A stretch of 64,000 nt of DNA from Oculina patagonica (lineage: Eukaryota). The stretch is taken from assembly GCF_052425735.1 (NCBI RefSeq), contig NC_135761.1, positions 33,046,001 to 33,110,000 of the forward strand, in the 5' to 3' direction. A program made the position numbers and the translations under genes. The notes beneath the pieces are model-generated. The model ran no database searches. It had not been told where the DNA came from and saw nothing but the letters and a program-made list of their open reading frames with translations. Positions 14,699 to 63,377 of the stretch are shown here, piece by piece (the first letter of the stretch is position 1; each line of letters begins with the position of its first letter).

Positions 14699-14703
14699 TT
14701 TTT

Positions 14704-14720
14704 TGGCGACCACGAAGGGA
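14704..14720 (+). promoter_or_regulatory. Primer binding site complementary to the tRNA-Arg 3' end
   Basis: TGGCGACCACGAAGGGA just after the 5' LTR is the reverse complement of ...TCCCTTCGTGGTCG-CCA, the 3' end of metazoan tRNA-Arg(UCG). Confidence 0.85.
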
Positions 14721-15073
14721 GACATGAGCTAGTGGAAATTCGAGGAATTGTCTTGCTCAAGGGGAGCTCAAGGTTGATTTATTCGCATCGCATCGCATCG
14801 CATCGTCTCGATTTGCCATTTTGGATTTCGCGTTCGCTTGTGGAACTTCGTACAGGATTTGGACTGTTTTCGGTGGTAAAAGTTCAGGAAAGTTGAGGTC
14901 AACGTTTGTTATTCTTATCGCTTCGCATGTATTTTCGTTTCACGGTTTTGTGGTTGTTTATTATCTTGACGTACAATTATTCGTCGGAGTCGTTCGTAAG
15001 GAAATCAAATCAACAAGAAGGTCTTCGAGGTTGTAGAGCGTGTGTTAAGGGTTTTGTTTTACGTCGCACGATA

Positions 15074-20500: not shown

Positions 20501-20576
20501 AACATTAGGAAACTTTCAGTTGAAAACATTTATTGTTACATTTTTTCGTGTTATACACACTGCGGTCCCCTCAGTG

Positions 20577-20589
20577 CGGGGAGGGGGAA
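20577..20589 (+). promoter_or_regulatory. Polypurine tract
   Basis: G-rich run ending ...GAGGGGGAA directly before the 3' LTR. Confidence 0.85.
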
Positions 20590-20806
20590 TGTTCAGGAGG
20601 AAAGCGTGACTTAAGCGTGACCGTGACGTTGTGTTATTTGAGTGACATATGTCAAAAGATTGGATGTGCATGCGGTGAGGTGTAAGGTTTCTAGTCGAGT
20701 AGTTTTCCGGCCATGTTGAGCCATGATGTTAAAAAACAAGACAAGTTTAGTGTCTTTAGTGGATTAAAGTTGTGTTATTTCAAGATGCCTGTCTATCTTC
20801 GCAACA
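20590..20806 (+). repeat. 3' LTR (217 bp)
   Basis: Near-identical to 14481-14698. Confidence 0.97.
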
Positions 20807-20922
20807 ACAACACGATGGAATACGATGCCACCATTGAAAATGACCCATCAATTGATGATTTTCAATTTGCTGACGTCTATGGTAGGGTGGGTTTGGATGG
20901 AGAGGAAACCACTGATGGCCAA

Positions 20923-21164
20923 GCAGTGGTAGAGGGTGGAGTGGCTGATGGTGGCAGGGGCCGAGCAGTGGTAGGTGGCGGAGTGGCTGATGGTGGCAGG
21001 GGCCGAGCAGTGGTAGGTGGCGGAGTGGCTGATGGTGGCAGGGGCCGAGCAGTGGTAGAGGGTGGAGTGGCAGGGGCCGTGCAGTGGTAGGGGGTGGAGT
21101 GGTTGATGGTGGCAGGGGCCGAGCAGTGGTAGAGGGTGGAGTGGCTGATGGTGGCAGGGGCCGA
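20923..21164 (+). repeat. 42-bp coding minisatellite (~6 copies; one has a 10-bp deletion)
   Basis: GCAGTGGTAG(A/G)(G/T)GG(T/C)GGAGTGGCTGATGGTGGCAGGGGCCGA encodes AVV(E/G)GGVADGGRGR. Confidence 0.92.
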
Positions 21165-25300: not shown

Positions 25301-26728
25301 GAAGACATTGTCCTTGGTTGTTATGTCCAAGTCCATTCAATCAAGTCTGGAGAAGGGCAAAAGAGAAGTATTGTGAACCCCTCAGTAAAGGTGAAGATTG
25401 CTAAACCATACACTCCTTTGTATCTCTTGAAACTCTTTGATCCATAGTCAAAAATCTTCGAAAGACTTCAGTTGAACCATGGACACCTTCTAAACTCTTC
25501 GGGTCAACTTTGAAAATCTTCGGCAGTCTTCGTGTAAACTTCGGAAACCCTAGAAAGTATTCATGTCCACTTCAGACATCTTCGAAAGTCTTCGAGCCCA
25601 CTTTGGAAATCTTCCGAAGATTTCGCTTCAAGTTCGAAAATCTTTGGAAGATTTCAAGTTGACTTCAGTAACCTTTGGAAAACTTCAGGTGAACTTTGGA
25701 AGTCTTGGAATGCTTTGTGGGCACTTTCCGAGGTTTTTAGTAAACTTTGTGTCAACTTCGGCTAATTGGAGTAACTGGTACACTTGTAGAGTTCAATCTC
25801 AGATTAATTGTACTCCTTGCCCAAACAGAATTCACTAATTCTGTTATGTGTACTGTTTAATAGTCGTTACACTTATTGATGTATTGATGCTCTGCTATTC
25901 TTAGCTAAGTTTATTTTCATAAACTGTGTTTGGTCACAGCACAAATTTTTTCTTGCATTTTTGCTCGCTTGGTAGCGTAGTAAAAATGGCGCCTGCGCAA
26001 AAAAGGTGTCTAAAAATGGCTTACTCGTGAAAGAGATATTCGCAACCCCATTACCATAGATATTTTAGGAACTTCTGGAAATATTTAATTCTTGGCAGCA
26101 GGACTAATAGCCACTTTGTTTTATGTCGCTTTGTTTACAGAATTATCAGCTAAAAGCAGTCTATCAGATGAAGAACAAAATCATTGTGTGCCACTCAGCG
26201 ACCATGAAAGCAACCAATCTGATGACGAATAAAACCGTAGTTTGCCACTCAGTGACCATGATTTCAGCAATGCGAGTATACAATCTGATCAGGAAGTTGA
26301 CATTTTGAGGTATGTATTTTTCATGCCCGACCCGATACCCATTATGAACCGGGGGTGGTGTGATAGATTCTCCCTGAGGCATATTATACCCCTCTTTTTA
26401 TCAGACATTTATCAGCTAAGTGCGACAACAGTGCCTGATGGAAGCTGCTAGTTTCTCAGCAATTGAAACGAGAACTGGGATTGCATGGTGACAATGAAAA
26501 ACGTACAGGTAAACTTGGACTCTTTGATAGCAAGTGAAATGAACAATGTGACTGTGGCCTAGTTAAGTGGGGGGACAACTTCGAACACCTGTAGCAGCCT
26601 TTTTTCACCTCTTCGACGCTCCTACCGGCAGCTCCCACTTCTAACAAAACTACTTTTGGTGCCATCCCAGCCAACCATTCTTCGCCATCAGATTTGTGAT
26701 CCTTGGTCTTGGTACAACTATTGCTACG

Positions 26729-37866: not shown

Positions 37867-38410
37867 GTAGGATCTACTGAGAGATCTGATCAGCAATAAA
37901 ATGAAATAACAAACAACTGCAAGCAAGGCTGATCATTTTACATATTTTTGGACTGTAGATCTTTTCAGATCCGATATGCTGTGCTTTTATTTAGCATGGT
38001 TTTGTCCATGCGCTTAAATGTTCGGAATGGCTGTGCCTACCACATTTAAGTTATTTTGCTTTGCGAGACTCCATCGTGACACTTTGAATTTCTTGTCCCC
38101 CGAAACACGTGATGTGGCAGCGCGTGATTCGGGGGACAAGTAAGTTCAAAGTACGGAACTTGATACAGTGTACGGGTTATTGGGCAATTTATTTGCGTTG
38201 GCCTTTGGGCTGGCGTCATTACGATTCGCTACACCGCGCTGATGAGTTCCAATAAGAACGAAACAGCTGTCCGCGGTTTCAATCCTGCTGTATCGGTTCC
38301 AGTCGTGGTGTTGTCTCGCAAAGCCTATTTTTCACGTAGTATGATCAGCCTTGCTTGCAGTTGTTTGTTATTTCATTTTATTGCTGATCAGATCTCTCAG
38401 TAGATCCTAC
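37867..38410 (+). mobile_element. Penelope/retrozyme-like non-autonomous unit bounded by a perfect 70-bp inverted repeat
   Basis: 37867-37936 is the exact reverse complement of 38341-38410; contains a hammerhead motif and a hairpin at 38081-38152. Confidence 0.7.
38233..38277 (+). ncRNA. Minimal type I hammerhead ribozyme
   Basis: Helix I ACCGCG/CGCGGT; core CTGATGA; helix II GTTC-caataa-GAAC; GAAA; palindromic helix III CAGCTG; cleavage triplet GUC ending at 38271. Confidence 0.88.
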
Positions 38411-38574
38411 GAAGGGGGGACTACGAATAGCAGCATTATCGTTTGCGGTCCCTTGCAGTTTTAGTCTAGATTTTAGGACTTCCGGTCTTCATGTATGCAG
38501 TCATGACGTTTCAAAAGAATGTATGAGAGAGTCGTTTGGTTTTAACTTCCGTTTAGGAATTCTTTGTTCCAAAC

Positions 38575-38935
38575 AGCCAATCAAAAAATTCGAATTAATT
38601 CAAAAATCCTATGTCCCCAGAGCCCTCCGTTTTCTCGTGCCAAGCCGGCTAAGAGAAACGAAAGGGCTATGGGGACGAGAAAGCCCCCTGACACATTTGC
38701 ATATCGAAGTTCCACCCACGGCCCGTTTCTACGCTCCACGTGTTTTTAGTGCGAATACTCGAACCGGGACAGTTTGAACAAAGTTAACCAATCGCAGCGA
38801 TAATTGATAACAAAGAATTGAAACAATAAGTTAACAACAAAATTTGAAAATTCAGCAACGTTGCAAATAGATGCGGACCTCTCAGGAAACCCTTCTTTCT
38901 TTTGATTGGTTAGTTTCGATCCCAAATTTGAAATA
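38575..38935 (+). promoter_or_regulatory. Putative promoter of the DM-domain gene
   Basis: CCAAT boxes near 38577, 38788 and (reverse) 38905, within ~400 bp upstream of the ATG; relatively CpG-rich. Confidence 0.4.
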
Positions 38936-38980
38936 ATTTCGGTTTTGCTTCAAAACGGGTTCAGATGCGAAGTCTTCAAG

Positions 38981-39407
38981 ATGTCGGCAACAAAAGCAAC
39001 TGCGCCAAAATGCCGGCGTTGTAGGAACCATGGTTTTGTTACGAATGTGAAAGGGCACAAAAAAGTGTGTCCGTTTCGGGATTGTTGCTGCGTTGAATGT
39101 ACCGCGCTGTTATTGGAACAGCGTGCTACTGCTGTTAAGGTGGCAAAACTTCGTGCTAAAGAAGGTAGTTAATGTGAAGTTCTGTTCGTATTCATGCATA
39201 GTTGTAACGTTGTTGAGCAGACCGAGGGGACAATTGAGCGCGCAAAGAAAAACCTTTAATAAATATGTTTATTTATGCACTGACTTACGCTAAATGCTGC
39301 TCACTTTGCTTTTGTTAGGAAATAAAGCTGCAAAAAAACAGCAAGAAGCATTGCCTGCCAAACAGGCCTCTACCGTGGGCATGACAAAAACAGTTAAGAA
39401 TGCAGAG
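38981..39407 (+). CDS. DM-domain (doublesex/mab-3, Dmrt-family) protein, exons 38981-39164 and 39319-39407; candidate last exon 54350-54418
   Basis: PKCRRCRNHGFVTNVKGHKKVCPFRDCCCVEC is the complete C-x2-C-x2-H-x8-H-x3-C-x4-C-x-C-x2-C DM module; a phase-1 GT-AG intron joins an open exon 2 (GNKAAKKQQEALPAKQASTVGMTKTVKNAE). Confidence 0.88.
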
Positions 39408-41164
39408 GTTGGTTTAGTTTGCTGTTTTTTTTCCCTTTTTGATAAAAACCTTCAAAATAAATATTAATCAAGCCGTAACGACCTTCCTGTATTTTCGGTG
39501 TATGCTTCGAAGCTGTGGAATTTGCGGCCACTAGACATCAAGCGCAATGCATCATTAGACTCTTTAAAAATCTTCTAAAACGTTTCCTAAAGAAAACTTA
39601 TTGCAGATTATTTTTCGGGGCGATTTTGCGAGTCGCACGAAGCGCCAGGGAAAAATATGTTTCACGCGACACGCTTGTATGAAGCTGCAGTGACGGGGAA
39701 AACTCACACAGCGGTCAAACGCAAAAGTTGACGTCACATCCGGTCTTCGCCGCCTCGAACTTTCGACTTGAAAGTGGGCAAACTTTTGCAAGAAATTGTT
39801 AAAGAAATAGTACGGTGAAAGAACAGTTCAAGCTGGGACACTCAGTGAAGATGAATTATCAAATTTGGCTTTAAAGCAAAAGTTTACGAAAATTTATAAC
39901 TTTGTATGGAACATTTTGGCGGCAATAGTGAAGCCTCGCTTTCGTGTTAGTAGAAAAAGAAAAAATGATATTAAACTTGGTAAAGAAAGAAGCAATGTTT
40001 AATGAAATTTGCCCACAAGGAAATATTTCTCTGGAGGAGAGGCAGTTAAGGTAGAAATTGAGGAAGGGGATGAAAGCAGCCTACTTCATGGGTTACTCCA
40101 AGCTGAAGGCAGAGGTTAAGCTGCTTCCTAGCTCAGCAGATTATTTTGCTATTGACGGAAAACGAAAAGTAAGGTCAAAATAAGTAGTTTGTCAGCAATT
40201 GAAATAACAACTGGGATTGCATGATGACAATGAAAACGTAAACATGGAGTCTTTGATAGCAAAATGGACTGAACAATGTCACCGACTATTGCCTGAAGAT
40301 TCAAGATTTCTTCTTCAATTTGATAAGCTGAAGCCTAGTGTGATATTGATGTTTGGAAGTGATGGTTATTTTCTCAACCATGTGCAGTTGAATTGTCCCA
40401 TCTGTTTGGAAATCAAGATACTGAGTTCAATGAACACACCTCGGTCGTTTTATAAAGACATGCATCATGACAATCCTAATGCCTCAACAAACGCTTAAAT
40501 GCCTGGAAAATAACTTCGTCACTGAAGAAGCACTTGCCCAAAAATGAGTGCTTCCCGGTGGACTAGTCACTCAGGTTGCTGGAGGAAACTTATTATTATT
40601 AACTTAAAATTAAATTAACTTAACATTAGAAATGTTTTATATACGTTTATTATTTATTTTCTCATTATGAATTATTATTGTAAATATTCTGTAATTAATT
40701 TTCGTTTTTATGTATTTCAATTTTTTAATACTGAAATTTTTGAATTAATGTTTCATAATCCTGGCAATATGGTCAAGTTTGAGTCAGCATTTTGGCATTT
40801 TAGTATCAGCTGTACGACATTGGATATCCGATGGACAGCTGCAAGTATGAGTCAACTTTCGTTTTTTGTAAGCTACAAATGTAAATGCGTTTGCAGTTTC
40901 AAGTAAAAGTGGAGTACCGCATGGATGATGTTGTAAAGGTTTACATAGAGGTCAACGTTTTGGATTTAAATGTTTAAACTGTAATTATAACATAATTCCT
41001 TAGACCATCATTAAAAAAAATATTTTAACATGTCCATACAGTACCTTGTGAAAAATGTTTTGGATGTAGCCTAAATAATCAACAAGAACAACGATTGATT
41101 AAGACCATATTTATAGTAAATGTAGGTTAAATGGTACCAAGGAAGCGTACACTGCAGCTTCCTG

Positions 41165-41430
41165 TATTGGAAGACAACCAGACAGTGACATATGGGTGTT
41201 TGGGGAGGACCTCCAACTCAGTGGAGATGGCTCCATTGTGGAAGATCAAACTTTACCTTTCATCTGGGTGAGGGATGTCTTCCTGCTTGAGTAGGGGGTT
41301 AGTACGAAAATAGAGCAGTGGCCACTGCCTTCTATGAAACTGCCTCTCTACTTATATGCTCTCAGAGATGTCGTTAAATCTTTGTACCTAACACTACATG
41401 ATAATGCCATGGCTGGAGTCTTTACAACAG
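41165..41430 (+). pseudogene. Decayed exon of an unidentified (probably TE-borne) protein
   Basis: IGRQPDSDIWVFGEDLQLSGDGSIVEDQTLPFIWV...LHDNAMAGVFTT ending at a GTATGT donor; contains a stop. Confidence 0.35.
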
Positions 41431-41534
41431 GTATGTGAACTGTTTTGTTTATAACATATTATTTTCCATTCTCATAAGTTAACATTTTGAGGTGAAAGAA
41501 AACTTCTGAGGAGTTTGCACTGGTTAAGAATGAA

Positions 41535-42122
41535 GGATGCTTTTCATGTTTGCGCATCATGGAAAAAGCTGGAATAAGCGAGAAAGAAGTAAGTTTAAGA
41601 ACTGTGCCTCGCTACTTACATAATGTTTTTGACCAAACCATTTTTTCAGTCACAAGATGTCTGCCACCGGGCCCAGTGGTCTGGAAGTGCATGTGGCTGT
41701 GGCTATGGCAAAAGCCAAGTACAATTTGTGACTAACTTCTATTAATTTACCTGTATATAAATAAACAACCATCTGTACAAGTCTGTCTTAGAGTGTTATC
41801 TTGAGACAAGATTGGACTGATTTTACCATGACAAAGTGGTTTTGCTTTCACCCAACCAGAAGCAGCTACCTTTTTTTGCAGGCAAGGAAGAAAGGTCTTT
41901 TAACAGAGAAAGGTCTAAAACTGCAAATTTCGCTTTGCAAGAATGATGAACAGGAAATATTCTAAAGATGTTTGGACTGAGGACAACATTTTATCTCCAA
42001 GGCGTTACTTTTGTTCACAAAACAACCCTGCAGATCAGGCGCGTGCAGCGGAAGGACAAATTTGGCGGAAAAAAAATGTGAGGGGATGAGCTTTGATATA
42101 CTGCAAAGGGACAAAAAGAAGG
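41535..42122 (+). pseudogene. Tc1/IS630-like transposase fragment (HTH to first catalytic region), interrupted at ~41620-41860
   Basis: RIMEKAGISEKEVSLRTVPRYL ... FLQARKKGLLTEK ... KDVWTED ... NPADQARA..GQIWRKK ... TAKGQKEG. Confidence 0.65.
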
Positions 42123-42319
42123 TACATGTGTAAGACTTGTGAAGTTGTTTATGGCAATCAGAAAAGGACAATTGCGACATATGACAGTTCCAGAAAGAGC
42201 GTTGAGGGATGTAATGGTGAATGGCTAGTTTGCGCAACGCAAGTTCTCAGCAATAATTCAATATCTCCAGTGTTTTTCAGTGCTGCTGTGAAACATATGT
42301 TATCCAAGCTTGCTTCTTC

Positions 42320-42578
42320 AAACAAGGTGATAATGCACCCCCAATTTCTTGTGCCTTTCAAGAGAACAGCACCGCTGCATAACATTAGCAGCTGTGCCAC
42401 TTGTGAAGGACTGCACCACAACTGCAGCAAAACCTTCTCTTTTTGAAAACTGCAATAAGTCAGCTTGGCTGCAGGTAATCAGATAAACACTGTTAATATG
42501 TTTATCGGTCAGTTCATCACTATCCAAACTACTTGAGAAGTTTGAATCATTACTGAAATAGCCTTGTACTGACTCCAT
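42320..42578 (-). pseudogene. HUH (rolling-circle Rep) endonuclease N-terminal fragment
   Basis: SVYLITCSQADL (motif I-like) ... CCSLERHKKLGVHYHL (E-x-H...HUH motif II); truncated before the catalytic Tyr motif. Confidence 0.6.
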
Positions 42579-42966
42579 AGCGCATAGAAATGAAAATCCA
42601 GTATTGCATGATGAGAAACAACTTGAAGGTTTTGTAAAAGTTAATAATTTGTCAGCCTTATCACTTCCCATTGCAGTGATTGCAAACATCCTAGGCATTT
42701 CATTGGTTTGTTGACAATATATCTTTTTCGATCACTCTCACAGTTGACTGAGCATTGTTAGCTGACTGCCGAATTCACACATTTTGCCAATGCACATCTT
42801 GTCTGCTTCGTTCAAAGGGATTTTCGTTGGCTTTCTCTGGTAATTGTGTCAATCATTTCATGCCGGTTTCACTGTAAATATTGTATATTATCATTAAGGT
42901 TAGTGGCTCGTCGATAAGTTTCATTGTAAATATTGTAAATAATTCTGGTTGCGGATTCATAAGTTG

Positions 42967-44193
42967 ATGGCGTCCAGGGAAAAAGGTTCCTGTCCTTGCT
43001 GTGCTTTTCTCTACTCCACTCGTTGGAAGCCTTCCAGCTGCCCTAAATGCGGCTTTGAACTTGGAGGTACTGCACTTGCTAAGGTTGCTAAAATATGTTG
43101 TCCGAGAGCGGTTGAAATTCATGGCGGATTGTTCTTGGTTCGATCAAGTTCATGCGACAATCGTTGCTTTGTTTACCGTGAAGGCTTGTTGTGGAAATGT
43201 CTCCACGCTGCCTGCAAGGGCATGATGGCGATATTTGTTTCCAGTGACTGTTTACAGAAGTTTTCCTGTCAACACATCAAGGAAGTAACCCATAGCGTTG
43301 GTGTAATGGGCAGATTTTATCTTTCAGAGGAAAATATGTCATCCTATCCTTGCGATGAATCAACGAAGGTTATCTTGCGCAATTTGACTACACCAAACAG
43401 TCATTGGCCTGTGTATAAAGTCTCAGATCACACTTGGTTCACCGAGTGTGAGGAATACTCTTGGCTTCTGCCACGTTAAGATACAAAGACGGGATGACAT
43501 TAACATATACAGTTGTATCTGTAAGGGTTGCGTTAGCAAAGGAAAACAGGAGAAGTCACGCACCATTTGTAGTCATCTTCATGTGTTGTTTTGTGTCCTG
43601 GCGCTGTCATCATCTGGCGACTCCAAGCCCAAAACAACTTCTGCTGCATCATCAGAAGATACTGCAACCGAAACCTCGTCTACATCTACACTTGCATCTA
43701 CCTCTTCCTTTGCGTCGTCAATTGGGGGATGCTATAGTGACTTACGCCTCTGCGTCTTCAGAAGCTAAAGTGACCGCAGCCTCTGCGTCTTCAGAAGCTA
43801 TAGCAACTGTAACTTCAGGAGCAACAATAACCTCTGCATCCTCAGGAGCTGCAATTGCAGACTCTATGGCCTCAGTGTCCAGAGTCAACACTATGGAGCT
43901 GCATTCTTCCTTTAAACTCCCATATGAGTTTGATTATCAGCTCTTAGAACTGATAAATTATAAAAATGCCGCCACATACATGGGGTCAAACGAGGGTTGG
44001 CCATTTGATGTAATGGACTCACAATGTCGAGTCTGTGGTAGTACCTTGGGTTATTCAAAGGCCCATCCTGGATCAAGAGGTGGCTCAGTGTTTTACACAA
44101 ATTTAAATGTATTCAAGGACATTGTTAACTCTGTGCGTGAATGCACCAATTCTCTGTGCAAGGCAATGCATAGAGTAATGCCAACTGAATATG
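42967..44193 (+). pseudogene. HMGXB3-like / KDZ-transposase-associated Cys-rich protein 5' region, two frameshifts
   Basis: CPCC..YSTRWKPSSCPKCG; RCFV...CLH..C...CQH; CIC...CSH (SWIM-like); WP......CRVCGSTL...RECTNSLCKAMH (CxC-type cluster); ends at a GTATGT donor. Confidence 0.6.
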
Positions 44194-45189
44194 GTATGTA
44201 TATCTTGAATGTTAATTATAATTTGATGGTTGAAATACAATTAATATGTACAAGGCTATGTGGTGAAACAGTAGACAAAATTATAGAAGGGACACAAACC
44301 TTGGAATATTTGTTTTTTTACCCACTGAATATGAAGAAAAAGTAGCTACCCGTATGGCTGATGGAGTTTGGACGACACAATTTCTTGAAAAATTTTTAGA
44401 TTCATGCCATGTTTTGGAGTGCTTCTCAATTACTGTGGCTAAGTTCAGCTGGCACCTAATTAAATCATTTCTTTGAAAAAAGAAGTTAAGAAACATTAAG
44501 AAGGTGATATTGCAAGCAGGCACTGATGATAGGAGACCTGAAGATTACTACATTATTCGTGCAGCAAAGGACATTTCTTTCCCTACCCAGAGTAGTCTTG
44601 CGGTGTGTTTGTGTGAGACCTTAATGAAGAGTATTTAGGAGGCATTCCCTTCACACGATTTTTTTAAAAAAGACGTGATTATTTTTATGCTTAGCAAAGA
44701 AAAGGTACCAATCAACAAAACTAACAGCACTTTATACATGTTTATGTAATTGCGACTTCAATTCTTGATCAAATGTCTTCAATTGTTTCTTTTTAACTCA
44801 CAGTCTCCAGTGTTATCACTGATGCTATGCAATATGTCAATTTCCCCTGACTCAAAATAAAATTCTCTGAATTTTCCCTGACCTTGAAGAAGGTTATTTT
44901 TCCTTGGCAATTCCTTTCCTGTTCAACCCTGATAGTGCAGTATGGTGCCTCTGACTTTTGCCACCTCATAAAAATCTCCAAACCACTGACCAAGAATACA
45001 ATAAAACCTCACTTCACATTGTCAACTGGAGTATGCTTAACATTTGTCGGAAAGTGGCAACACTTTTCACAATGTCATATTCTCTTACAAATGTTCCATT
45101 TCCCCTGAGCAGTATCAATGTGCCTGTTACAAGTGCAAGCTAAAACCCAAACATCCAGTCAAAGTTCAGATGGGAATAGCAGACATGCT

Positions 45190-45402
45190 CCCACAAGGAT
45201 TTGTAAATTTGATGGCATCATGGATGCTGTTCTCTTCTGTAACATCCTAAAAACCACTCTGGTTCCATTCATCGGAGAAAAGCTGCCAGACCATCCTTTA
45301 ATGCAATATAACAATGCAAAGCATACTTCAAGACAAGCAAAAGCCGAACGGAAAATGGAGGAATCAACTGGTGGCCGACTCCAGCTGAAAGTCCAGACCT
45401 GA
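45190..45402 (+). pseudogene. Tc1-type transposase C-terminal fragment
   Basis: FDGIMDA..FCNILKTTLVPFI...MQYNNAKHTS...INWWPTPAESPDL (degenerate QDNxPKH...WPxxSPDLNPIE). Confidence 0.8.
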
Positions 45403-46808
45403 TGCTAAGAAAATTCATTTAGCTGCACCTACATGATATTTCCCCACCTTGTCTTTCATTGCTATAGTCTATTGAAGCAGAAGAGGCATGTCACCTTTCT
45501 GACATTAATTTTGCAAGCACAAAATGTAACACATTTTGTTAGTCTTACAAATAGAAAGAAAGTACATATGGCTGAGATTTGGTCACATCAACATAACTTT
45601 CGCTGTCATCATCTCAGAATACTGCATTGCCCATGTGACAAGGAGAATGGGTAATGCAATGAAAAATCAACAAAAATAAATTTATTATAGTTTTCTTGTA
45701 CAGAGCAGAATGCAGGCTATGAATAAAATTTACGGTTTCATCGCATCACATTTATTTACTTAAGATCTCAGCTTCCAATTTTCCACCAACTACATTGACA
45801 TTGATTTTTGATGCAACATCCATAGTGATAAAAACACTTCATTTGCTATCGTCATGTGCAACACATTCAAAAGAAGGATGAGGTGGTCATGGAAAACTAT
45901 TACAATGAAAAGAAGGACACACACAAATCTAGTGGAAAGAGTGGAGGAAAAGGCAAAATACCCTTGGCTAACCCCAAACAAGTTTTGCCCTCAGCAACAA
46001 AACGTCCGCATCAATCTCCTTCAAAACATCAACTTCATCTATTGACAAGACTGGGAGTGAATCAGCTGAAGGGGTTTTCAATAGAGACCTCTTGTGGCAG
46101 AAGATAAAGCTTTGTAGCCAACTTGCCAGTAGCATACCAAACTCTTCACAGTTGGTGGAGTTATCAACACTGTCACAAGATAGGCTCTTGTCAGGGCCAG
46201 ATGAAGAATTCCCGGGTGGGCAACACTTGAAGTCAGGGAAGACAATGTCTCTCAACCATACTCTGAATTTCTTTAAGTTTTGATGTGTCTGAAGGCTGAT
46301 TTATCTGTGAAGGATCATGTGACAGGTTTGGTATTGACAGGTTTGGTATTCAATTCCATACATTGAATGATCCTCATAAAGTAGTTTAACTTCCATGTTG
46401 CTTTGTCTTCCCTAACTGGTGAGACATATGCCTTGTGTCTAGGATTCCCATAAAATGGATTAATTTGTTTCAATTTTAGCTACAGGATAAGGCGAAACAG
46501 ACGCCAATGAGGCAAACGCTTATACCCTCTGCAAAGGGAGAAGAGAGTGGCAAATCCCTTCCAGAAAGCCCCTTAAATGTGGATGTACCAAATACTGAAG
46601 GAGTTTCTTCGCGTCTGTATCCATAACACAAATTTATACACTTTCCTTGCCACCTATCAAGCAATAAAGAATAGCACGAAAGACCCCGTGTAAAAATAAG
46701 TTGAACATTAAATACTGTAAATTTACTGTAGAAACTCCAAACATTTGTGGTTATTACAGATTTGCACATTATCTATACGCATATCTGTACATTATCTGTA
46801 CTTCCTAG

Positions 46809-47075
46809 ATCAATTTAAAGATTTTGTCGCAGGTCTTGTAATCACACATTTTATTGGACAGTATGCAAAAACTGGTATGCAATTCTCTTGGTGTGTCCAC
46901 AACAATGTTGGGTACAAGGAGGAAGCTAAATTTCTATGCCTGAACAAAGACAAGGACTGCATCAAAGAAGTCGTTAACATCATCAAGAGTTGGAATCCCA
47001 CTTGGAAACTGAAGTATTTTATGGTGAATTATTTGATGGCAGAAATAAGTGGGATTGAACCATCAATGTACACCT
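46809..47075 (+). pseudogene. MULE transposase domain fragment
   Basis: CVHNNVGYK..AKF.C....DCIKEVVNIIKSWNPTWKLKYFMVNY..AEISGIE resembles the MULE core around the second catalytic Asp (here Asn). Confidence 0.6.
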
Positions 47076-47574
47076 TATTGACTATGTAGATAATGCTGTT
47101 TCATATACCAAAGACAATTTCAAGCCTTATAAATTTATATTACCCTTAACAAGAGAGTAATAGACAAAGTAAAAATCCTCACCGAATTGCAGGAAGCTTT
47201 ACCAAAGCTAACTGTCATACATACCGACTTGGGAGAATTGTTTGCCATTCAACAAGTCAACTGGTTTTAGTTTTTAGACCTTGCTGATGACAAACGCAAA
47301 TTTACTCTTGATTACACATGTGACAGAGAGCTGCATTTTAATACTCAAGCAGTTGCGCTGTCCTTGAAATTACATGTTTCTGTGGCAGTGATCATCTCAG
47401 CAAAATCTGGGGACTGAGAAATTGGATTCATACCCCCTCCCCCCCACCACCTTCAGGACCTCCTCAGCTGAACATCCTTTTAATACTTAATCGAATTACA
47501 GCAAAATACCAAACTAGCCTGCTTGAGGTTCTTATCACATACTTGCTTCCTTTGTCATGTTGTGTTGAGTCTAT

Positions 47575-48005
47575 TTGAAGAATTCAGAAAGGAATTTAAA
47601 GACTGCACTGCTGGAGACATGCCAATCATGGCCCTGACAGCAACAGCATTACAACTCTGTTGAAAAGCCTTAAGCAAAGTCTAGCATTAAATAAGAACTA
47701 TCAAGTCATTTTAGCAAACCCAAATCGGATGAAGATATATTTTGACAAGAAGGTACCGATGAGTAGCCAGCATGGTTTTCATAGATATGAACAAATTCTA
47801 CTACCTATTGCAAATGAATTTGCCCTTCAAAGAGAAAAATATCCTATGAACATGATATATTTAAAACTGCAGTATAGTGGCTATAGTTTTTGAGTGAGTT
47901 CTACAGGAAAAAACAGTTTGTTGGGGGCAAAACAGAACCACCTGCTAGCCTTTTTGCTCAATTCCATGCACCACAGACAACAAGCATAAAGAAGAATACT
48001 ATTGC
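47575..48005 (+). pseudogene. RecQ-type helicase fragment 3
   Basis: EFRKEF...MPIMALTATA...LANPNRMKIY...YEQILLPIANE...KYPMNMIYL...LFAQFHAPQT. Confidence 0.7.
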
Positions 48006-48347
48006 AAAGTAGGGTACATTTCACTATTATGTGGGAGTCGCCCTTGAGATGTAAACCATTATAAATATGTACCATCTGATATGTAAGTGATCTAAACATT
48101 TATTAATTTATATTATTCATAGCAAACCTCTATTTGTTGATTTATTTAAATATTGCTGTGTAAATTGGGCAAGCTGAACGCCATTGAGGTACCCGTCGAG
48201 AGGAAAACATGTAAGCACAAAGAGGTTGTAACATCCAACTTTGACCATTTGAAGGGGATGTTTCCGGTCATTGTGCAGAAGTGTTGGTGCAGTCAGGGAC
48301 TGCAGCAACTTCCCGGCTTCGCGTTTGCCAGGGGAGCTGCACTGTAT

Positions 48348-49245
48348 CAGGTGATGGTTATCTACGGGATATTTGAGGGTTACGTGGCACACATCAGTCA
48401 TGTCGACGTACCAAGAGAGATGATGGCTGGAGCTACATTGTACCTGCTCCAAGTGGGAATGCCCTCTTCCATGAAACCGATGAAAATGGACTTTATGACC
48501 ACACAGTTGCAGAGATCAAGCCTGGGACCTACCAGTTGCCGCTGGCGGTCCTGGATTATTGCACCCAGGAAGGGAGGTGCGTTAAAAGAAAAAAAGGAAG
48601 CAGAAGATCATGGCCATGCCGGTGCCATGTGAGGCAGGTGATGGTTATCTGCGGGATATTTGAGGGTTACGTGGCACACATTAGTCATGCCAAGAACCAA
48701 GAGAGATGATGGCTGGAGCTACATTGTACCTGCTCCAAGCAGGAATGCCCTCTTCCATGAAACCGATTAAAATGGATATTTTGCGGAGACTTAATGACCA
48801 TGCAGTATTTTTAAAGCCAAGTTCAAAACACACCTTTTTCATCGTGCATTTTTATCATAGTTGTTTTTAAATTATACTCTACTTTTAATAATTGTAGTTT
48901 TAGCTTTTTTTGAATTATTCTAAGTTTACCTTTAATTGTACTTTTAGCTTTTTAAATTCATTGTAAGTTAAATCTTAATTGTAATTTTAGTTTTTAGCTT
49001 TTTTATTCCATTTTTAATCTTGTAATGCGCATTTGAACATTTTATGAAATTTGCGCACTATAAATGTTATTGTTATTATTATTATTATTATTACTATTAT
49101 TATTATTATGCAGTTGCAGAGATCAAGCCTGGGACCTACCAGCCGCTGCTGGTGGCGCTGGATTATCACACCCAGGAAGGGAGATGCATTAAAAGAAAAA
49201 AAAAAGCAGAAGATCATGGCCCTGTCGGTGCCCAGCGAGGTCCAA
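48348..49245 (+). repeat. ~287-bp tandem duplication (copies from 48348 and 48635; third partial copy 50849-50973)
   Basis: CAGGTGATGGTTATCT...GCTACATTGTACCTGCTCCAAG...CAGTTGCAGAGATCAAGCCTGGGACCTACCAG is repeated. Confidence 0.85.
48807..49107 (+). mobile_element. 5'-truncated L2/CR1-group LINE 3' end with (TAT)n tail
   Basis: FKAKFKTHLFHRAF*, AT-rich UTR, GCGCA stem-loop, (TAT)n; 7-bp TSD ATGCAGT (48800-48806, 49108-49114); absent from the upstream duplicate copy. Confidence 0.85.
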
Positions 49246-49499
49246 ACCATGAGGACATTTGTCACTAGCTTGAAGAGGTGTCGAAAGCAGCACAACTCTC
49301 ACTCACTCAAATTTGAAGCTGAATGTGACAGAGTGGTAGATATGCTGATAAACGAGAATGCCAAGACCTTCAACATTGCCTTGGACAGAGTTCTAAGTGG
49401 AATGACACGTGAAGTGTGTAGTGCCAAGGAGCCCCCAATCCCATGTCTTGTGCAATGAAGGGTGTAGTGAAGAGTGGTAAACGGAAAAGGCATGTTATT

Positions 49500-50280
49500 G
49501 ATAGATAAGAAAAGATAAGATAAGATGGCCTGGGAGTAGTGGAAAGGATTTATTTCCTTGACGAGTTGAACAAGCAGCGATTGTACTCATTGATCAAGGG
49601 ATTTTGCGAATTTCACCCACGATCAAGTTCTGCCCTTTTCCTTTTGGAACGAAATCAACGGAGGCCGACCTGGGGACAAGGCGTTCGTGAGGCAGCTGAT
49701 GTATGCCCTGGGCCGTTCAAGACTCGATTACTCGGCTTTTAACTTGTTTGTTGGCTGTGAGATTCAGTGGAACTTCTTCGATGAGATAAGGTAAGATATT
49801 CTTCTATGATAAGATAAGATAAGTTGATAAGATGAGATGAGATAAGATAAGATATTGTAAGATAAGATAAGACATTCTTCTAAGATAAGAAAAGATAAGA
49901 CAAGGTAAATTGATAAGAAAAGAAGAGTAAAGATAAGATGACCTTTGAGTGGTGGAAAGGATTTATGTCCTTGACAAGTTGAACAAGCAGCGGTTGTACT
50001 CATTGATCAAGGGAATTTGCAAATTTCACCCACGATTGAGTTCTGCAATGTTTTTGTGGAACGAAATCAACGGAGGCCGACCTGGGGACAAGGCGTTCGT
50101 GAGGCAGCTGATGTATGTCCTGGGCTGTTCAAGACTCGATTACTCGGCTTTTAACTTGTTTGTTGGCTGTGAGATTCAGTGGAACTTCTTCAATAAGACA
50201 AGATAAGATACGATAAGTTGATAAGAAAGGAAAAGAAAAGATCAGATAAGATCAGATATGATACTAAGATAAGATAACCG
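49500..50280 (+). repeat. Two ~260-bp copies (49523-49790, 49937-50200) embedded in (GATAA)n microsatellite
   Basis: Both copies read ERIY.LD.LNKQRLYSLIKG.C.FHPR.SS...; GATAA runs before, between and after. Confidence 0.85.
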
Positions 50281-53200
50281 CCAGCTATAAAATATCCTGA
50301 AGCCTAATACTAAGAGGTTTTAAAGCTTTTATAAGTCGGTTTATTTTTACTCAGATCCTTTCAAATCAAGAATAAAATAAATTAACACGACACAATACTT
50401 GATACAGAATCAAAACCAAGGATTATTTTCGTGAATGTCTACTCTTTTGTCTCCAGGCAGCTTTCCACAAAGAGGCCAATTGTTGTTTACTTTTATCACA
50501 CATACACCAGGAAGCTGAAGTTTGGACATGTTCACAGAATTTATAAGCACTCCTATGCTGTTTATACAAAAGACAAAAACTTTGACGTCGTGCTATTTCT
50601 AGCTTGTCCCAAAGTGGATCTGTCCTCTTGTAAGTTGACTGTAAATAATGCAGGCCAAAGCACTGGTCTAGTTGAGCAGTTTAAATTATATTTAATTCAT
50701 GGGTCATGAAAACACTTTTTCCACAAGAATTTAATGACCACAGATGAGGCCATGAAAAGTATTTTGCAAGATTCACCAGTCATGAAATGATTTTTATGGT
50801 CTTTTTCAAGGGATTTTCGTGGGATTTTAACAAATCCGTGTTTCATAGTGCAGTTGCCGATGGCAGCGCTGGATTATCGCACCGAGGAAGGGAAGTGCAT
50901 TAAAAGAAAAAAGAGGAAGCAGAAGATCAAAGATGGCTTGAAGAGGTGTCGAGAGCAGCACAACTCTCACTCTCCTTCCATGTTTTAGTAAAATTCTAGG
51001 AAGAATTATATACAAAAGGACACTGTGGACAAACGCAACATGTGTCAAAGTCAATATGGTTTTTGTAAAGATCATTCATTCATGTTTCAGGAAGCAGTCA
51101 TTTGGCGATGAAGGGAAATAGTTTATTGCAGAGGCATTACTTTTAAAGCAATTAAGTTGTAGCATGGGAAATCTTGAATTTTTTAAGTATTAATTTTAAG
51201 CCAGAGGAGATCATCAATCAAAATTGTATTGAGGGAAGCAGGCACTGCTTCCTGTAAAAGTGGCTATCATAAGGAAGTACGTGCTTAAGCCATATCCTTG
51301 TTTGCCATCATTGGAGGAATCAGTGTGGAAAAATGCACATGGGAGGAATATTCGAGTCAATGGTCAAGCAGGTGAAAAAAGCATGCCATGGATGTTTCCT
51401 AATAACTATTCTTAATTCTTTATGCACACTTTATTTAAGTGACGTTTGTCATTGTCAAATAAAGTTGATTACAGATTTTAAGTATACGCTCAAAACTGCA
51501 TGTTGGTTGTTTGGCTTTGTTCGGGCAAGTGAAGGCAGAGCGTTTATGATATAATTTGCCCTTAGTTTTGAAGTAAATATTTGGTCATGTGCTGACAAGT
51601 TAGACTGTTATGTAAGTGTTTTGTTTCTTACCTAATAAACAGGGTGGGCCAGGGTTTTCGGGTGTACGGTATGCAAGGGCTTTTTAAATTTAGGTATTCG
51701 GTATACCACATTTTATTACAACCATCGGGAAAGAACACATTGTTTCCAAATTTGGCATAAAGGGAACAGTAAACGTTAGGTGGATTGCAGATGACACTAT
51801 CGAGATTGAAGAAAGTGATTATTACATTTACTTAGCGTTGTTACACTCATCAAGAGACAAAGTTCTCTCTTTTGAAGAACCCGAACTTATCGCTGATAAA
51901 TACTTGAGTGAAAGAAAAGAGGAAACCGACAAGCACTACAGCAGACCCAAAAGATGCAGGAGAATGGCAACAACAACAGATGACTTTCTTTTTTATTAAG
52001 AGACTAAAGACAACATCGCACTTGAGCCTATTTTTTATATAAAACAATACTAAAAACTTGTGTGTATCTAAAACAACGGACAAGTTTTCTAGAAATCTTT
52101 TCTAAGCATTGAGGTTCTGGCTGCCTTTGAGAAAGCAGAACATGAACATAACAGTAGAAAGAGGAAGGCCTCCGCAGAACAAGACAAGGGATGTTTCTAA
52201 GAAGAGGAACTTGAATTAGTGACTAAAGGCGTGAGAATTTTTTTTTCATTGTTTTCTGATGCAAGACATGAAAAAATGCTGCTTAACACCCTCGAGTATG
52301 TTGTCATTTAAGTGTTATATCACTGCAGAATCTTATTTTCTTTACTAAATTGACGTCTTAATAGGCAGATTTCTTAAAGATATTTCTGAAAAGGCAGTCA
52401 TGGCATCTTAAGTCAAGAAAAAGACATCTTGGTATAATATATTCTTACAACATTCTTGTCTCCTTTGGTTGTTTCCTTCAGAAACTTTCTCAATGACTTT
52501 CTTGTTTGAGAAACACAACCATACTTTCAGACAAAGACAAGAAAAAAGCACTAGAAATTCTGTCCTCTCAAGATGCCATGGATTTCATGTCATCTGAAAA
52601 AAGCCACAAGGAACCAAAGAGTGGCCCCAAAGTTTATTGAGGAACAAAAAAAGCAAAACTTGATAAAGCACATTCAGCTGGACTGAGTGAAAGGCAACGT
52701 CGAACAAGTGCCTGTGTCACTCGCAGTGAAGAGAAATCAGCTTCTCAAGCCGAAGAAGCTCAGGTCAATCCCTTAATCAATATGAATGCTGACGACCTAG
52801 CCAAAATTCTCTCCGACCATACGAAACAACTTGCTGAGTATTGGGATAAACAATTAGTCACGCTCTCCAAAACAGACGAAACTTCACATCAAACGCCCAC
52901 TTTTTTAGTAAAGGCCCTCGTTGGGCAGTTGGCAGGACATAATATGAACGTTATATATACCACAGAGCAGTTGAAAATGCATGTTATGTGACTGACTTGT
53001 GACATGTTATGTGTTTCCGTGGCCCTTTAGGTCTGTATACGTCGACAGAACCATGAACAAGCCGTATTTCCAGAACCTAATTGCATGTTTCCGCAAAGGT
53101 AACCATGTCCGCTTGCAGAAACCAATGTTTCCTTCAGATGAAACTTAACAGAAACCTAAAAAAGTGGTCCGGTTCCACTGTGTCTGCATCAACGGACACA

Positions 53201-54349
53201 CAAGTAAACGGCACAAAACCGCAGATGGAAAGATGTATAGTTTTCTTCGTCATATTTCTACAACGGTGACACATGTTTCCGCAACAAATTATTACAAATT
53301 CATGGTATTTCGTCCTGTGATGGCTGATGGATAGATACCGAGATAAGCTTTGACATGAAAAAACAAAACCCGAATATGGAAAATTCCATGCACGTTTTTT
53401 TAGCCTCTTGATGTACAAAATGACAGGTTTACTTGCCCAGTTGTTAAGAGAACCCATCTCCAAATAGAAATAGACTAAAGAGCCAAGAAACAAAGTGGTG
53501 AGTACAGACAAGAGTCTGAAGATCCAATCTATTTAAGATCATCCCGACACAAGCTCTACTCCATTGAAAAGAGAATGGCAGACAATTTCACACAGATTCC
53601 TTCACAAATGGCTGAACTAAGGTGCAAGTTCAAGCAACAAATTCATGGTATCAAATTCAATTTTTTGAACCATACTGGTCAAAAGGTCACACCTCTTTCA
53701 AAATTAATTTATTTGACTTGAGGTGGACTGTTTTCCTAGTTTTTGATATCTAACTTGCGTGATCTCTTTTAGTTTCTCCACCTATGGAAAACATTGACAA
53801 AAACAAATTTGATTATCATTCCATAACTGCTGAAGGAAAGTTATATTTACATAACTTTGCTGTCCTGGTTATTTACCAGCGGTTGACTTAAATGAGAAGA
53901 GAAGTAAAGTTCTTTTGGAAAAATAAGAGACCTTGACTAGCTGAATAACCAGAAAGTAAAATTAAGTTTGTTTTCCTTAATTCAAATAATTTATCCTGAT
54001 GATATTGAGTGTACTATAAAATTAATTTTGATGATTAATTTATTTTATCACTTGATGGTTATCGCTATTATAAAAGTAACAGATTTTAGAATTTTAAGTC
54101 ATAAGGAAAAGCTAATTGATGATGGTTCTATTATAGAGTTAAAGAAAAGCATGTGATGTACATGTATTTGTCTAACTTGTAGTAAGAAATATCAGTAACT
54201 CATAAGGTATTGATTTGTAGAACCAATTTGCGTCAGTTAAGGTCGTATTTGAGTATTTATAATTAGATCCCTAGTACAATTTTATAAATTGCTTACTACG
54301 TATTCCCGGGTGTATTTGATTGCTCGAATATTATGTTTTGTTTTTTTAG

Positions 54350-54418
54350 GATCAAAGAAAGACAAAGATTATACGATACCGTGTCCAGTCACTTCCTCCA
54401 AAACCATTTAAGGAATAA
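54350..54418 (+). CDS. Candidate terminal exon of the DM-domain gene (DQRKTKIIRYRVQSLPPKPFKE*)
   Basis: Strong T-tract+AG acceptor ending 54349; phase 0 is compatible with the donor at 39408; AATAAA at ~54747. Linkage is inferred, not shown. Confidence 0.35.
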   Translation, partial: DQRKTKIIRYRVQSLPPKPFKE

Positions 54419-61720: not shown

Positions 61721-62725
61721 AGTATTTCATACTCGATTCGATTCTGTAATGTTCATGTCGCTATTGGGGGTCACTCCGTGTAAAACCTTCTAGTTTTCTC
61801 GTTGTTTCGATTAAGTTTTCTGTTCGGTGTGAGTTTTCGTATGCGTTTTTCTCTTGTTAAGGTTTTTATCCGCCACTAACAACGTGCTTACACGACGGAA
61901 AGCGAAATTGGCTGCCGCACAAAAACGTGCCAGTACAAAAGATTCTACTAAGTATTGTGACGGAACTTGCGGAAAACCTGTTTCGCAGAAATCGGCTAAG
62001 GCCATTCACATTTCCGGTTTCGCCTGCCGCGAGTCTTAAACAATTATCTCGAGATCTTTTTTTTAAGTTTCTTGTAAATCTCGTCCGGAGATAAACTGAT
62101 CAAGGCTTTTCTCCGTTCAAGTAGTTTGCGCTTGGTAAATCGCGGTTTTGGACTAAGGCTTGCTTATCGTAAATCGCAGACAAATTTGAAGATATGGCTT
62201 GATATGTTCGTACGTGTTCCTAGACATATTTCTTCTTCGGCCACTCAGATGTAAAAAAATGTGGATTTTCTTACTTCTCTGCGAGTTACTTAGTTAATTA
62301 TCGCGAAGTCTTTTCAACAATTGCATTGCTTCCGGCTTTTAGACATTGTGAAATGAATAGGCCTCGAGTAAAACTCAAATTATCTTTTTCAAAATTCTGC
62401 CCAACTGCAATCAACGTTTACAAGCGTCGTTTGTTTGCTTGTTGTCATCCGTGCACGTGCTCATGCTTGGACTGTCATCATTACCCAATCATCGTTTACT
62501 TGCGTCATCATTGACCAATCACCGTATGTCGGCATTTTACAACTCCCGATACCTACTTGCGGGCTTTCAGCTTGTCGGCATTTTAAACTCCCGAGACTAT
62601 TTGCGGGCAAAAAATGATCAAATCGAGATTTTTCCCGGTATATACTATATATATACTCTATATTCGCGCGGATTACAATGATGCCTCCTCGGGTTTTGGC
62701 CTCTGGGCCAAAACCCTGCGGGGGC

Positions 62726-63377
62726 AATAAACATTCATTAGTGATCATCTCACGGTCCCTTGCCATAAGAATCATTTCACCATGAGAATAATTAAATTGT
62801 GAGCTCCAAACAAACATATCAATAAACACTCATTAGTGATCATCTTATGGTCCCTTGCCATAAGAATCATTTCACCATGAGAATAATTAAATTGTGAGCT
62901 CCAAACAAACATATCAATAAACACTCATTAGTGATCATCTTATGGTCCCTTGCCATAAGAATCATTTCACCATGAGAACAATCAAATTGTGAGCTCCAAA
63001 CAAACATATCAATAAACACTCATTAGTGATCGTCTTACGGTCCCTTGCCATAAGAATCATTTCACCATGAGAACAATCAAATTCTGAGCTCCAAACAAAC
63101 ATATCAATAAACACTCATTAGTGATCATCTTACGGTCCCTTGCCATAAGAATCATTTCACCATGAGAACAATCAAATTCTGAGCTCCAAACAAACATATC
63201 GATAAACACTCATTAGTGATCATCTTACGGTCCCTTGCCATAAGAATCATTTCACCATGAGAACAATCAAATTCTGAGCTCCAAACAAACATATCAATAA
63301 CCACTCATTAGTGATCGTCTTACGGTCCCTTGCCATAAGAATCATTTCACCATGAGAACAATCAAATTCTGAGCTCC
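62726..63377. repeat. Tandem array of a 95-bp unit, ~6.9 copies
   Basis: Units start at 62726, 62821, 62916, 63011, 63106, 63201, 63296. Confidence 0.97.

What the first reader, a model, noticed from the sequence alone, without database searches (positions are those of the whole stretch)
38981..54418. Short, divergent Dmrt-family gene with intact zinc module but rewired DNA-recognition residues, embedded in a TE graveyard
Seen: all eight DM zinc ligands are present at canonical spacing. The recognition helix reads CTALLLEQRATAVKVAKLR instead of the family consensus CxLIAERQRVMAAQVALRR, and there is no Arg four residues before the first Cys. Established: in human DMRT1 the equivalent R72, R111 and R122 contact DNA, and R111 substitutions cause sex reversal. 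By manual alignment these are T, E and L here (also M115->T, Q118->K). No DMA or long transactivation region is visible; the best exon model gives only ~113 aa. Inference: a DM microprotein with altered specificity or dominant-negative action. Truncated Dmrt duplicates act as sex determiners or repressors elsewhere (Xenopus DM-W, lobster iDMY), and a TE-dense setting is what a low-recombination sex-linked locus looks like. A drifting young pseudogene is the alternative.
Basis: partly seen in the sequence, partly recalled or inferred. Interest (0 to 1): 0.8.

Follow-up and report, generated by a model that had tools for sequence, protein, structure and literature searches.

The report
Small divergent DM-domain gene in coral

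Summary
The DM exon is real. Positions 38981-39164 (+) encode a DM domain with all eight zinc ligands (Pfam 57 bits against a cut-off of 27; DMRT1 structure 4yj0, E 4e-14). The recognition helix is unusual: the human R111 position is Glu here, which occurs in 1 of 170 compared domains. The zinc module scores at the family median and the helix falls in the lowest 6.5%.

The 113-aa exon model is not supported. RNA contigs from three studies of closely related corals join 39146 to 47896, and the frame stops at 47946-47948. The product is therefore about 72-77 aa, a DM domain plus a 16-residue tail. The roughly 8.7 kb between the two points is either a repeat-rich intron or a structural variant.

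No close homologue was found; the best identity is 56%. Neutral drift is unlikely to have kept the ligands and the open frame (p about 0.0005). Even so, all three differences between the two sequence forms change the protein, and the end of the helix also differs.

My best reading is a fast-evolving, lineage-restricted DM-only small protein (0.45). A transcribed decaying relic is nearly as likely (0.40). Sex linkage is untested.

The parts
38835..38980 (+). 5' untranslated region. The transcript start is approximate. It holds two upstream ATGs at 38871 (21 codons) and 38965 (19 codons, overlapping the main ATG and out of frame).
   Evidence: The X2 contig aligns from 38855 with 22 unaligned letters before that point, and X2 depth is 0 upstream of 38835. 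The upstream ATGs were listed.
38981..39164 (+). Coding part of exon 1: start codon and DM domain (residues 8-58, about 39002-39154), ending at a GT donor at 39165-39166 in phase 1.
   Evidence: RNA contigs cover 38855-39146 in X2, X3 and X4, and 38916-39178 in X1.
39147..39164 (+). Last 18 bases of exon 1 (KLRAKE plus one base). They are present in the window and in the X1 contig. In the X2, X3 and X4 contigs they are replaced by the three letters GAG.
   Evidence: Loose ends at 39146; translations.
39165..47898 (+). Proposed intron of about 8.7 kb (GT at 39165, AG at 47897-47898), rich in repeats. Alternatively, 39147-47895 is a segment missing from the expressed allele of the relatives.
   Evidence: Zero RNA depth at 39171-39572 in four runs. 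Expressed multi-copy repeat at 39707-39866. 40185-40282 resembles 26449-26552. Weak ZSWIM1-3 RNaseH-like (MULE-type) match at 46745-47089, E 0.008. No terminal repeats or target-site duplication at its ends.
47896..47948 (+). Start of the terminal exon. It codes the 16-residue tail VLQEKTVCWGQNRTTC and the stop codon TAG at 47946-47948.
   Evidence: The 30-letter continuation of the X2, X3 and X4 contigs matches 47896-47925 exactly and nowhere else in the window. Frames; sequence.
47949..48280 (+). 3' untranslated region, end not defined.
   Evidence: The contigs run 96-185 letters past the junction. Their word shares (X2 0.29, X4 0.32) fit collinearity to about 48080. RNA runs X11, X35 and X36 hold as many words of 47880-48280 as DNA runs of the same species.
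39319..39407 (+).
   Evidence: Depth 0 in X1-X4.
54350..54418 (+).
   Evidence: No RNA call was left to lay reads on it.

Best explanation
This is a genuine, transcribed, lineage-restricted DM-domain gene of a stony-coral species group, with two exons rather than three. Exon 1 holds a 5' UTR from about 38.84 kb, the ATG at 38981 and the DM domain. In RNA it is joined to a terminal exon at about 47.9 kb, and the frame stops at 47946-47948. The product is about 72-77 residues: a DM domain plus a 16-residue tail, with no DMA or activation region. Shown: the domain, the transcription, the downstream partner, the short open frame and the unusual helix. Inferred: the intertwined CCHC/HCCC zinc module still folds, because it scores at the family median. 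The helix is still helical and the peptide is strongly basic (14 K/R against 4 D/E). However, the residues that read the canonical DMRT site are replaced (R111->E, M115->T, Q118->K, R122->L, R72->T). The protein therefore probably does not read that site in the canonical way. It would act, if at all, as a small DM-only modulator. It could join or compete with full-length DM proteins on DNA without supplying an effector region, or it could bind other sites. The gene is evolving fast between sister lineages.
For: Domain. Helix against zinc module: the zinc module ranks 83 of 170 and the helix 11 of 170; column counts are. Transcription: contigs in four RNA runs from four studies, with depth 0 in the flanking non-exon DNA, which rules out DNA carry-over. 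Downstream exon: the same 30-letter continuation in X2, X3 and X4, unique at 47896. Word shares show collinearity past the stop. The tail is read in the same frame as a canonical GT(39165)-AG(47898) splice of the window sequence. Long-term constraint: drift to 44% residue divergence keeps all eight ligands and the frame in 0.05% of simulations. The nearest library domain is 56% identical. The helix is predicted with pLDDT 86-95. Precedent: DMRT1 R111G is a dominant, neomorphic allele that alters binding by the wild-type protein (PMC9713387). DM proteins can heterodimerise on DNA (PMC1931443, title and abstract only).
Against: All three substitutions between the two sequence forms are nonsynonymous (K10T, V20I, T21R). 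None is synonymous, and none lies in 126 bases of 5' UTR. Purifying selection with omega <=0.2 has p about 0.002. The end of the helix also differs, KLRAKE against R. The junction 39146|47896 is not GT-AG on the window's letters. The splice reading therefore needs a small indel plus one further change in the relatives. The one contig identical to the window (X1) reads 14 bases through the donor unspliced. Two upstream ATGs precede the start. No orthologue outside the species group was found. There is no protein-level evidence.
Confidence: 0.45

Rival explanations
1. Transcribed relic. This was once a constrained DM gene and has recently lost constraint in this species group. It is still transcribed and spliced but is drifting, so the odd helix, the indel or deletion at the helix end and the all-nonsynonymous differences are decay.
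For: Three of three differences are nonsynonymous, which fits omega = 1 (P(>=3) = 0.13) but not omega <=0.2. The helix end differs between forms, and R123, an Arg in 122 of 170 domains, is lost in the relatives' form. Near-invariant DNA-contact residues are replaced. The surroundings are rich in transposable elements. Contig depths are low, 3-44. Upstream ATGs are present. No annotated protein or homologue was found in the databases.
Against: Both forms keep an open frame, the start codon and all eight ligands. The difference at the helix end preserves the frame of the tail. The zinc module is as good as a typical DM domain, whereas drift would damage both halves. The three changes fall in variable columns of the family.
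Confidence: 0.4
2. One reading: a 113-aa, three-exon DM microprotein (38981-39164, 39319-39407, 54350-54418) sitting in a sex-linked, low-recombination region and acting as a sex determiner like DM-W or iDMY.
For: The donor at 39164/39165 and both acceptors look canonical. The DM-only architecture resembles DM-W and iDMY (cited in PMC10194864). A Y-linked dmrt has been reported in the coral Goniopora (PMC10194864).
Against: Exon 2 has zero RNA depth in four runs while exon 1 is covered in the same runs. The observed continuation is at 47896, with a stop at 47946-47948. DM-W and iDMY act with near-canonical DM domains, whereas here the DNA-contact residues are changed. Every DNA run listed from three organism labels, plus a coral metagenome, holds the locus, and no sex information exists.
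Confidence: 0.04
3. An ordinary longer Dmrt paralogue whose further coding exons (for example a DMA domain) lie downstream or are used in tissues that were not sampled.
For: Only a few RNA runs were examined. Many Dmrt genes have an intron directly after the DM domain, as here.
Against: tblastn with 150 DM proteins finds no other Dmrt-like segment in the 25 kb downstream; the weak hits at 44.8-45.1 kb lack any Cys/His pattern. The observed mRNA is collinear through a stop codon 16 codons into exon 2.
Confidence: 0.05

Closest known systems
Canonical DMRT/Doublesex DM domains (human DMRT1, PDB 4yj0; Drosophila DSX, PDB 1lpv; Pfam PF00751)
   Same: It has the same eight-ligand intertwined zinc scaffold and spacing, and the same conserved non-ligand residues of the zinc module (R78, R80, N81, G83, K89, G90, K92, R98, D99 in DMRT1 numbering). 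A helix follows the last Cys..
   Different: It is only 42-56% identical to any library domain. The recognition helix lacks R111 (Glu here), M115, Q118 and R122, and the N-terminal arm lacks R72. Nothing recognisable lies beyond the domain.
Truncated sex-linked Dmrt paralogues: Xenopus laevis DM-W and spiny lobster iDMY (as cited in PMC10194864; mechanism from my own knowledge of the primary papers)
   Same: It is a DM domain with little or no effector region, which could interfere with a full-length DM protein.
   Different: Those proteins keep a near-canonical DM domain and compete for the same DNA sites, and they are sex-limited in the genome. Here the DNA-reading residues are changed. The parent gene is unknown and sex limitation is untested.
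Human and mouse DMRT1 R111G (PMC9713387)
   Same: The same helix position is changed. The mutant is not a simple null but alters DNA-binding specificity and the binding of the wild-type protein, which shows that a non-Arg residue at 111 can be dominant.
   Different: R111G is a single substitution in a full-length protein. Here the residue is Glu and several other contact positions are also changed, in a protein of about 75 residues.
Cnidarian Dmrt genes (Goniopora GddmrtA-C, PMC10194864; Nematostella Dmrt set, PMC4433094, title and abstract only)
   Same: They belong to the same phylum and the same domain family. One Goniopora copy is reported as sperm-limited.
   Different: The three Goniopora genes all carry DM plus DMA domains with conserved DM sequence. 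This gene has no DMA domain and a divergent helix. Orthology could not be tested because no cnidarian genome sequences were available to the tools.

Membership tests
DM domain family (Pfam PF00751) | Profile score above the curated threshold | tested here: met
   57.2 bits against a cut-off of 27, E 1.5e-15, covering profile positions 2-44 of 47.
DM domain family (Pfam PF00751) | Eight zinc ligands (CCHC + HCCC) at canonical spacing | tested here: met
   C11, C14, H17, H26, C30, C35, C37 and C40; these columns are invariant in 170 of 170 compared domains.
DM domain family (Pfam PF00751) | Recognition helix carrying the conserved DNA-contact residues (R111, Q112, R113, M115, Q118, R122/R123 in DMRT1 numbering) | tested here: not met
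   Q112, R113 and R123 are kept. R111->E (1 of 170), M115->T, Q118->K (0 of 170) and R122->L. The helix score lies in the lowest 6.5%. A helix is still predicted, with pLDDT 86-95.
DM domain family (Pfam PF00751) | DM fold in three dimensions | tested here: inconclusive
   The AlphaFold2 model has mean pLDDT 65, and the zinc module is poorly modelled without metal. The only PDB match is DSX 1lpv at E 0.45.
DM domain family (Pfam PF00751) | Sequence-specific binding to the DM consensus site | not testable with these tools
   This needs EMSA or SELEX.
DMRT subfamilies with a DMA domain (DMRT3/4/5 type) | DMA domain downstream of the DM domain | tested here: not met
   No Dmrt-like segment other than the DM exon is found anywhere in the window. 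The mRNA stops 16 codons into exon 2.
Truncated sex-determining Dmrt duplicates (DM-W / iDMY type) | DM-only or effector-less architecture | tested here: met
   Open frames of 63-77 aa in every transcript reading.
Truncated sex-determining Dmrt duplicates (DM-W / iDMY type) | DM domain close to that of a canonical paralogue, so that both bind the same sites | tested here: not met
   At most 56% identity to any of 2191 library hits, and the contact residues are changed. The species' own paralogues could not be examined.
Truncated sex-determining Dmrt duplicates (DM-W / iDMY type) | Presence or expression limited to one sex | not tested

The most novel reading that the evidence does not exclude
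This is a naturally evolved 'poison-subunit' DM microprotein. In this reading, a roughly 75-residue zinc module with a Glu at the R111 position is kept by selection. It assembles with full-length coral DMRTs on DNA and changes their stoichiometry or site choice, as the dominant human R111G allele does. It evolves quickly because it sits in a reproductive or sex-related pathway, possibly as a polymorphic or sex-linked locus.
Probability: 0.15. Interest if true: 0.75.

Novelty: new member of a known kind. Interest (0 to 1): 0.4.

Why it matters
DM-domain genes are the one class of sexual regulators shared across animals, and how corals determine sex is largely unknown. A transcribed DM-only peptide whose DNA-reading residues have been replaced would be a compact natural test. 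It could show whether the zinc module alone can modulate other DM proteins. If it proves to be a relic, it still matters in two ways. It shows how a DM gene decays, with the helix going first and the zinc scaffold last. It also warns annotators that the exon model read from sequence alone was wrong.

Tried and rejected
1. Canonical splicing for the junction 39146|47896 on either strand. No shift gives GT-AG, CT-AC or AT-AC with the window's letters. A de Bruijn chimera is rejected because the two sides share no 30-mer. A one-off artefact is rejected because three studies show the same junction.

2. A transposon insertion with target-site duplication at 39147-47895. There are no terminal direct or inverted repeats and no duplication.

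3. A second copy of the DM exon or of exon 2 in the window. None was found.

4. A degenerate second DM domain at 44.8-45.1 kb (-), suggested by weak tblastn hits. Translation in all three frames shows stops and no Cys/His pattern, so the hits are chance.

5. A link between DM domains and transposases. The long multi-DM library hits carry only DM domains.

6. Close homologues. Two word-indexed searches covering 34-154 aa were empty. An exact-match DNA scan of metagenome contigs was empty, and a protein-pattern scan found only a canonical domain at 55% identity. Exact look-ups of the 63-aa and 88-aa open frames found nothing on record.

7. The many 70-200 aa DM 'proteins' in the library cannot show that DM-only proteins are common. 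Most come from gene calling on short Logan or ENA contigs and are probably exon fragments.

8. I did not type the spliced 72-88 aa products into any tool, because spliced products have no reference. Annotated models of that length were therefore not looked up.
Full report
**1. What is in the sequence**

Positions 38981-39164 on the + strand open with ATG. They translate without a stop to a 61-62 residue peptide containing C-x2-C-x2-H-x8-H-x3-C-x4-C-x-C-x2-C. This is the only such motif in the six frames of the window.

The peptide matches Pfam DM (PF00751) at E 1.5e-15, 57.2 bits against a curated cut-off of 27. Among solved structures it matches human DMRT1 (4yj0, E 3.8e-14) and Drosophila DSX (1lpv, E 3e-11). 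The match is far beyond chance.

**2. The 'rewired helix' claim**

HMMER's ungapped alignment to 4yj0 fixes the numbering, with the first Cys equal to C76 of DMRT1.
- R72 -> T
- R111 -> E
- M115 -> T
- Q118 -> K
- R122 -> L

I extracted 170 distinct DM domains from the 150 best hits of an exhaustive search of 1.8 billion representatives and counted residues column by column.
- Column 111 is Arg in 140, Gly in 20 and Glu in 1.
- Ala at column 114 and Lys at column 118 occur in none.
- Thr at column 72 occurs in 3.

A leave-one-out log-frequency score places the window's zinc module at rank 83 of 170, which is the median. Its helix ranks 11 of 170, in the lowest 6.5%. It is not unique, because a dozen domains in the set have helices that are even less canonical.

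The peptide stays strongly basic, with 14 K/R against 4 D/E. AlphaFold2 predicts residues 38-61 as one helix with pLDDT 86-95. It models the metal-dependent zinc module poorly (mean pLDDT 65; the only fold match is DSX at E 0.45), so the fold test is inconclusive. R111 is established as central to DNA binding, and R111G is a dominant, neomorphic allele in humans and mice (PMC9713387).

**3. The gene model**

Public runs holding the locus were found. One DNA run holds 100% of the sampled words and is flagged as the likely source (organism C). DNA runs labelled organisms A and B hold about 0.7, which is what roughly 1% divergence gives for 31-letter words. A run labelled 'coral metagenome' also holds the locus. 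The window is therefore from a coral, and A and B are very close relatives or other lineages of one species complex.

Contigs of four RNA runs from four studies were laid on the locus.
- *Exon 1 is covered in all four runs.* The neighbouring non-exon DNA (39171-39572) has depth 0, so this is RNA and not DNA carry-over.
- *In X2, X3 and X4 the contigs match 38855-39146 and then continue for 96-185 letters.* These runs carry organism labels A and B and come from three studies. The continuation begins with the same 30-letter string in each, which occurs exactly once in the window, at 47896-47925 (+).
- *Word shares of these runs on 47880-48280 (0.29 and 0.32) fit contigs collinear with the window to about 48080.* Three further RNA runs hold as much of that stretch as DNA runs do.
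- *The frame entering at 47896 reads R-VLQEKTVCWGQNRTTC and stops at TAG 47946-47948*.

The expressed product in the relatives is 72 residues.

**4. What the junction is**

On the window's letters the removed segment 39147-47895 begins AA and ends GT. No shift, on either strand, makes it GT-AG. It has no terminal repeats and no target-site duplication. Two readings remain.

(a) Normal splicing.
- The window has a good donor at 39164|39165 (AAG|GTAGTT) and an AG at 47897-47898.
- Splicing these gives ...KVAKLRAKE-VLQEKTVCWGQNRTTC, 77 aa, in exactly the tail frame seen in the relatives.
- The relatives would then differ by a 15-base in-frame change at the exon end. KLRAKE would become R, and their exon would end ...GGCAAGAG, which happens to equal the last three intron letters.
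- This needs an indel plus one more change.
- It explains why presumptive DNA runs of organism A (type not on record) hold 0.70-0.78 of the words of 38850-39500. That share is impossible if 39147-39500 were absent, because the ceiling would then be about 0.3-0.46.

(b) A genomic deletion, or an insertion in the window's lineage, of 8,749 bases.
- This is a single event that fits the letters exactly.
- It requires the variant to be polymorphic.
- It also requires the frame match and the closeness to both splice sites to be coincidence or the result of selection.

I put (a) at about 55% and (b) at about 35%. Either way, the second and last coding exon is at 47.9 kb and the protein is a DM domain plus 16 residues.

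The one contig identical to the window (X1, depth 2.9) runs 14 bases through the donor without splicing. The window's own lineage may therefore retain the intron at least sometimes, which gives a 63-aa frame.

**5. Is it under selection?**

*Long term: yes.* The nearest of 2191 library hits is 56% identical. In simulations of neutral mutation to 44% residue divergence, all eight ligands, the start codon and the open frame survive in 0.05% of trials. This is not a young drifting copy of a canonical Dmrt. The caveat is that a young copy of an already divergent, unseen parent cannot be excluded.

*Short term: no sign of constraint.*
- The relatives' contigs differ from the window at three places in 55 codons. 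All three are nonsynonymous: K10T, V20I and T21R.
- There are no differences in 126 bases of 5' UTR.
- With about 1% neutral divergence, three or more nonsynonymous changes have p 0.13 at omega 1, but p 0.002 at omega 0.2.
- The three sites lie in variable columns of the family.
- Both forms keep the frame and the ligands.

The data fit either fast, possibly adaptive, evolution of a working small protein or recent relaxation of constraint. The numbers are too small to separate the two.

**6. Context**
- tblastn with 150 DM proteins finds no other Dmrt-like segment in the window. The weak hits at 44.8-45.1 kb (-) are chance.
- Two word-indexed searches covering 34-154 aa, exact look-ups of the open frames and scans of metagenome contigs found no close relative.
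- The short DM 'proteins' in the library mostly come from gene calls on short contigs. They say nothing about how common DM-only proteins are.
- The window is repeat-rich. It holds a Pao LTR element with an intact 1864-aa frame and 99% identical LTRs, nested in an element with terminal inverted repeats. It also holds a reverse-transcriptase fragment, expressed multi-copy repeats on both sides of exon 1, a hammerhead-like motif and a weak MULE-type match inside the intron.
- Repeat density was not compared with the rest of the genome and does not by itself indicate a sex-linked region.
- A sperm-limited dmrt has been reported in the coral Goniopora, but it is a canonical DM+DMA gene (PMC10194864).

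**7. Verdict**

The exon model and the 113-aa product are not. The microprotein idea survives in a smaller form of 63-77 aa. The dominant-negative and sex-linked parts are untested speculation.

My best reading, at 0.45, is a fast-evolving, lineage-restricted DM-only small protein that has given up canonical site reading. A transcribed gene in early decay is nearly as likely, at 0.40.

This is a new member of a known family, of moderate interest. The interest would rise sharply if the peptide were shown to modulate a canonical DMRT or to differ between the sexes.

Noticed in passing
window 38219-38294 (+), inside 37867-38410: There is a match to Rfam Hammerhead_HH9 (38.7 bits, below the gathering score of 52; E 1.4e-07). 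It lies between perfect 70-base inverted repeats at 37867-37936 and 38341-38410, about 0.6 kb upstream of the DM gene.
   Followed up: partly
window 38434-38701: This stretch has very high summed RNA contig depth (hundreds to about 17,000), with many sequence variants and 'opposite strands' joints. It looks like a highly expressed multi-copy repeat just upstream of the DM transcript. A second expressed repeat lies at 39707-39866, inside the intron.
   Followed up: no
window 38813-38939: Several RNA contigs match this part of the DM gene's promoter and 5' UTR with a few mismatches. They then diverge at 38929-38939. The 5' end of the gene therefore seems to share sequence with other expressed loci.
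   Followed up: no
window 14481-20806, nested in 8578-21677: A Pao/BEL LTR retrotransposon has an uninterrupted 1864-aa frame (Peptidase_A17, RT, integrase, DUF1759, DUF5641) and 218-base LTRs that are 99.1% identical, so it is young. It sits inside an element bounded by 126-base inverted repeats that are 97.6% identical.
   Followed up: partly
window 62725-63377: A tandem array of units of about 95 bases, 92-98% alike.
   Followed up: no
window 48150-50930: A block of interspersed direct repeats (for example 48348-48490/48635-48776 and 49497-49870/49909-50277) with positive GC skew. It includes a 159-aa frame with no Pfam match and lies just downstream of the DM gene's last exon.
   Followed up: no
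window 46745-47089 (+): A weak match to the ZSWIM1-3 RNaseH-like domain (E 0.008, below the Pfam cut-off) suggests a decayed MULE-type transposase inside the proposed intron. A 77-aa frame ends at 47893, three bases before the RNA junction.
   Followed up: partly
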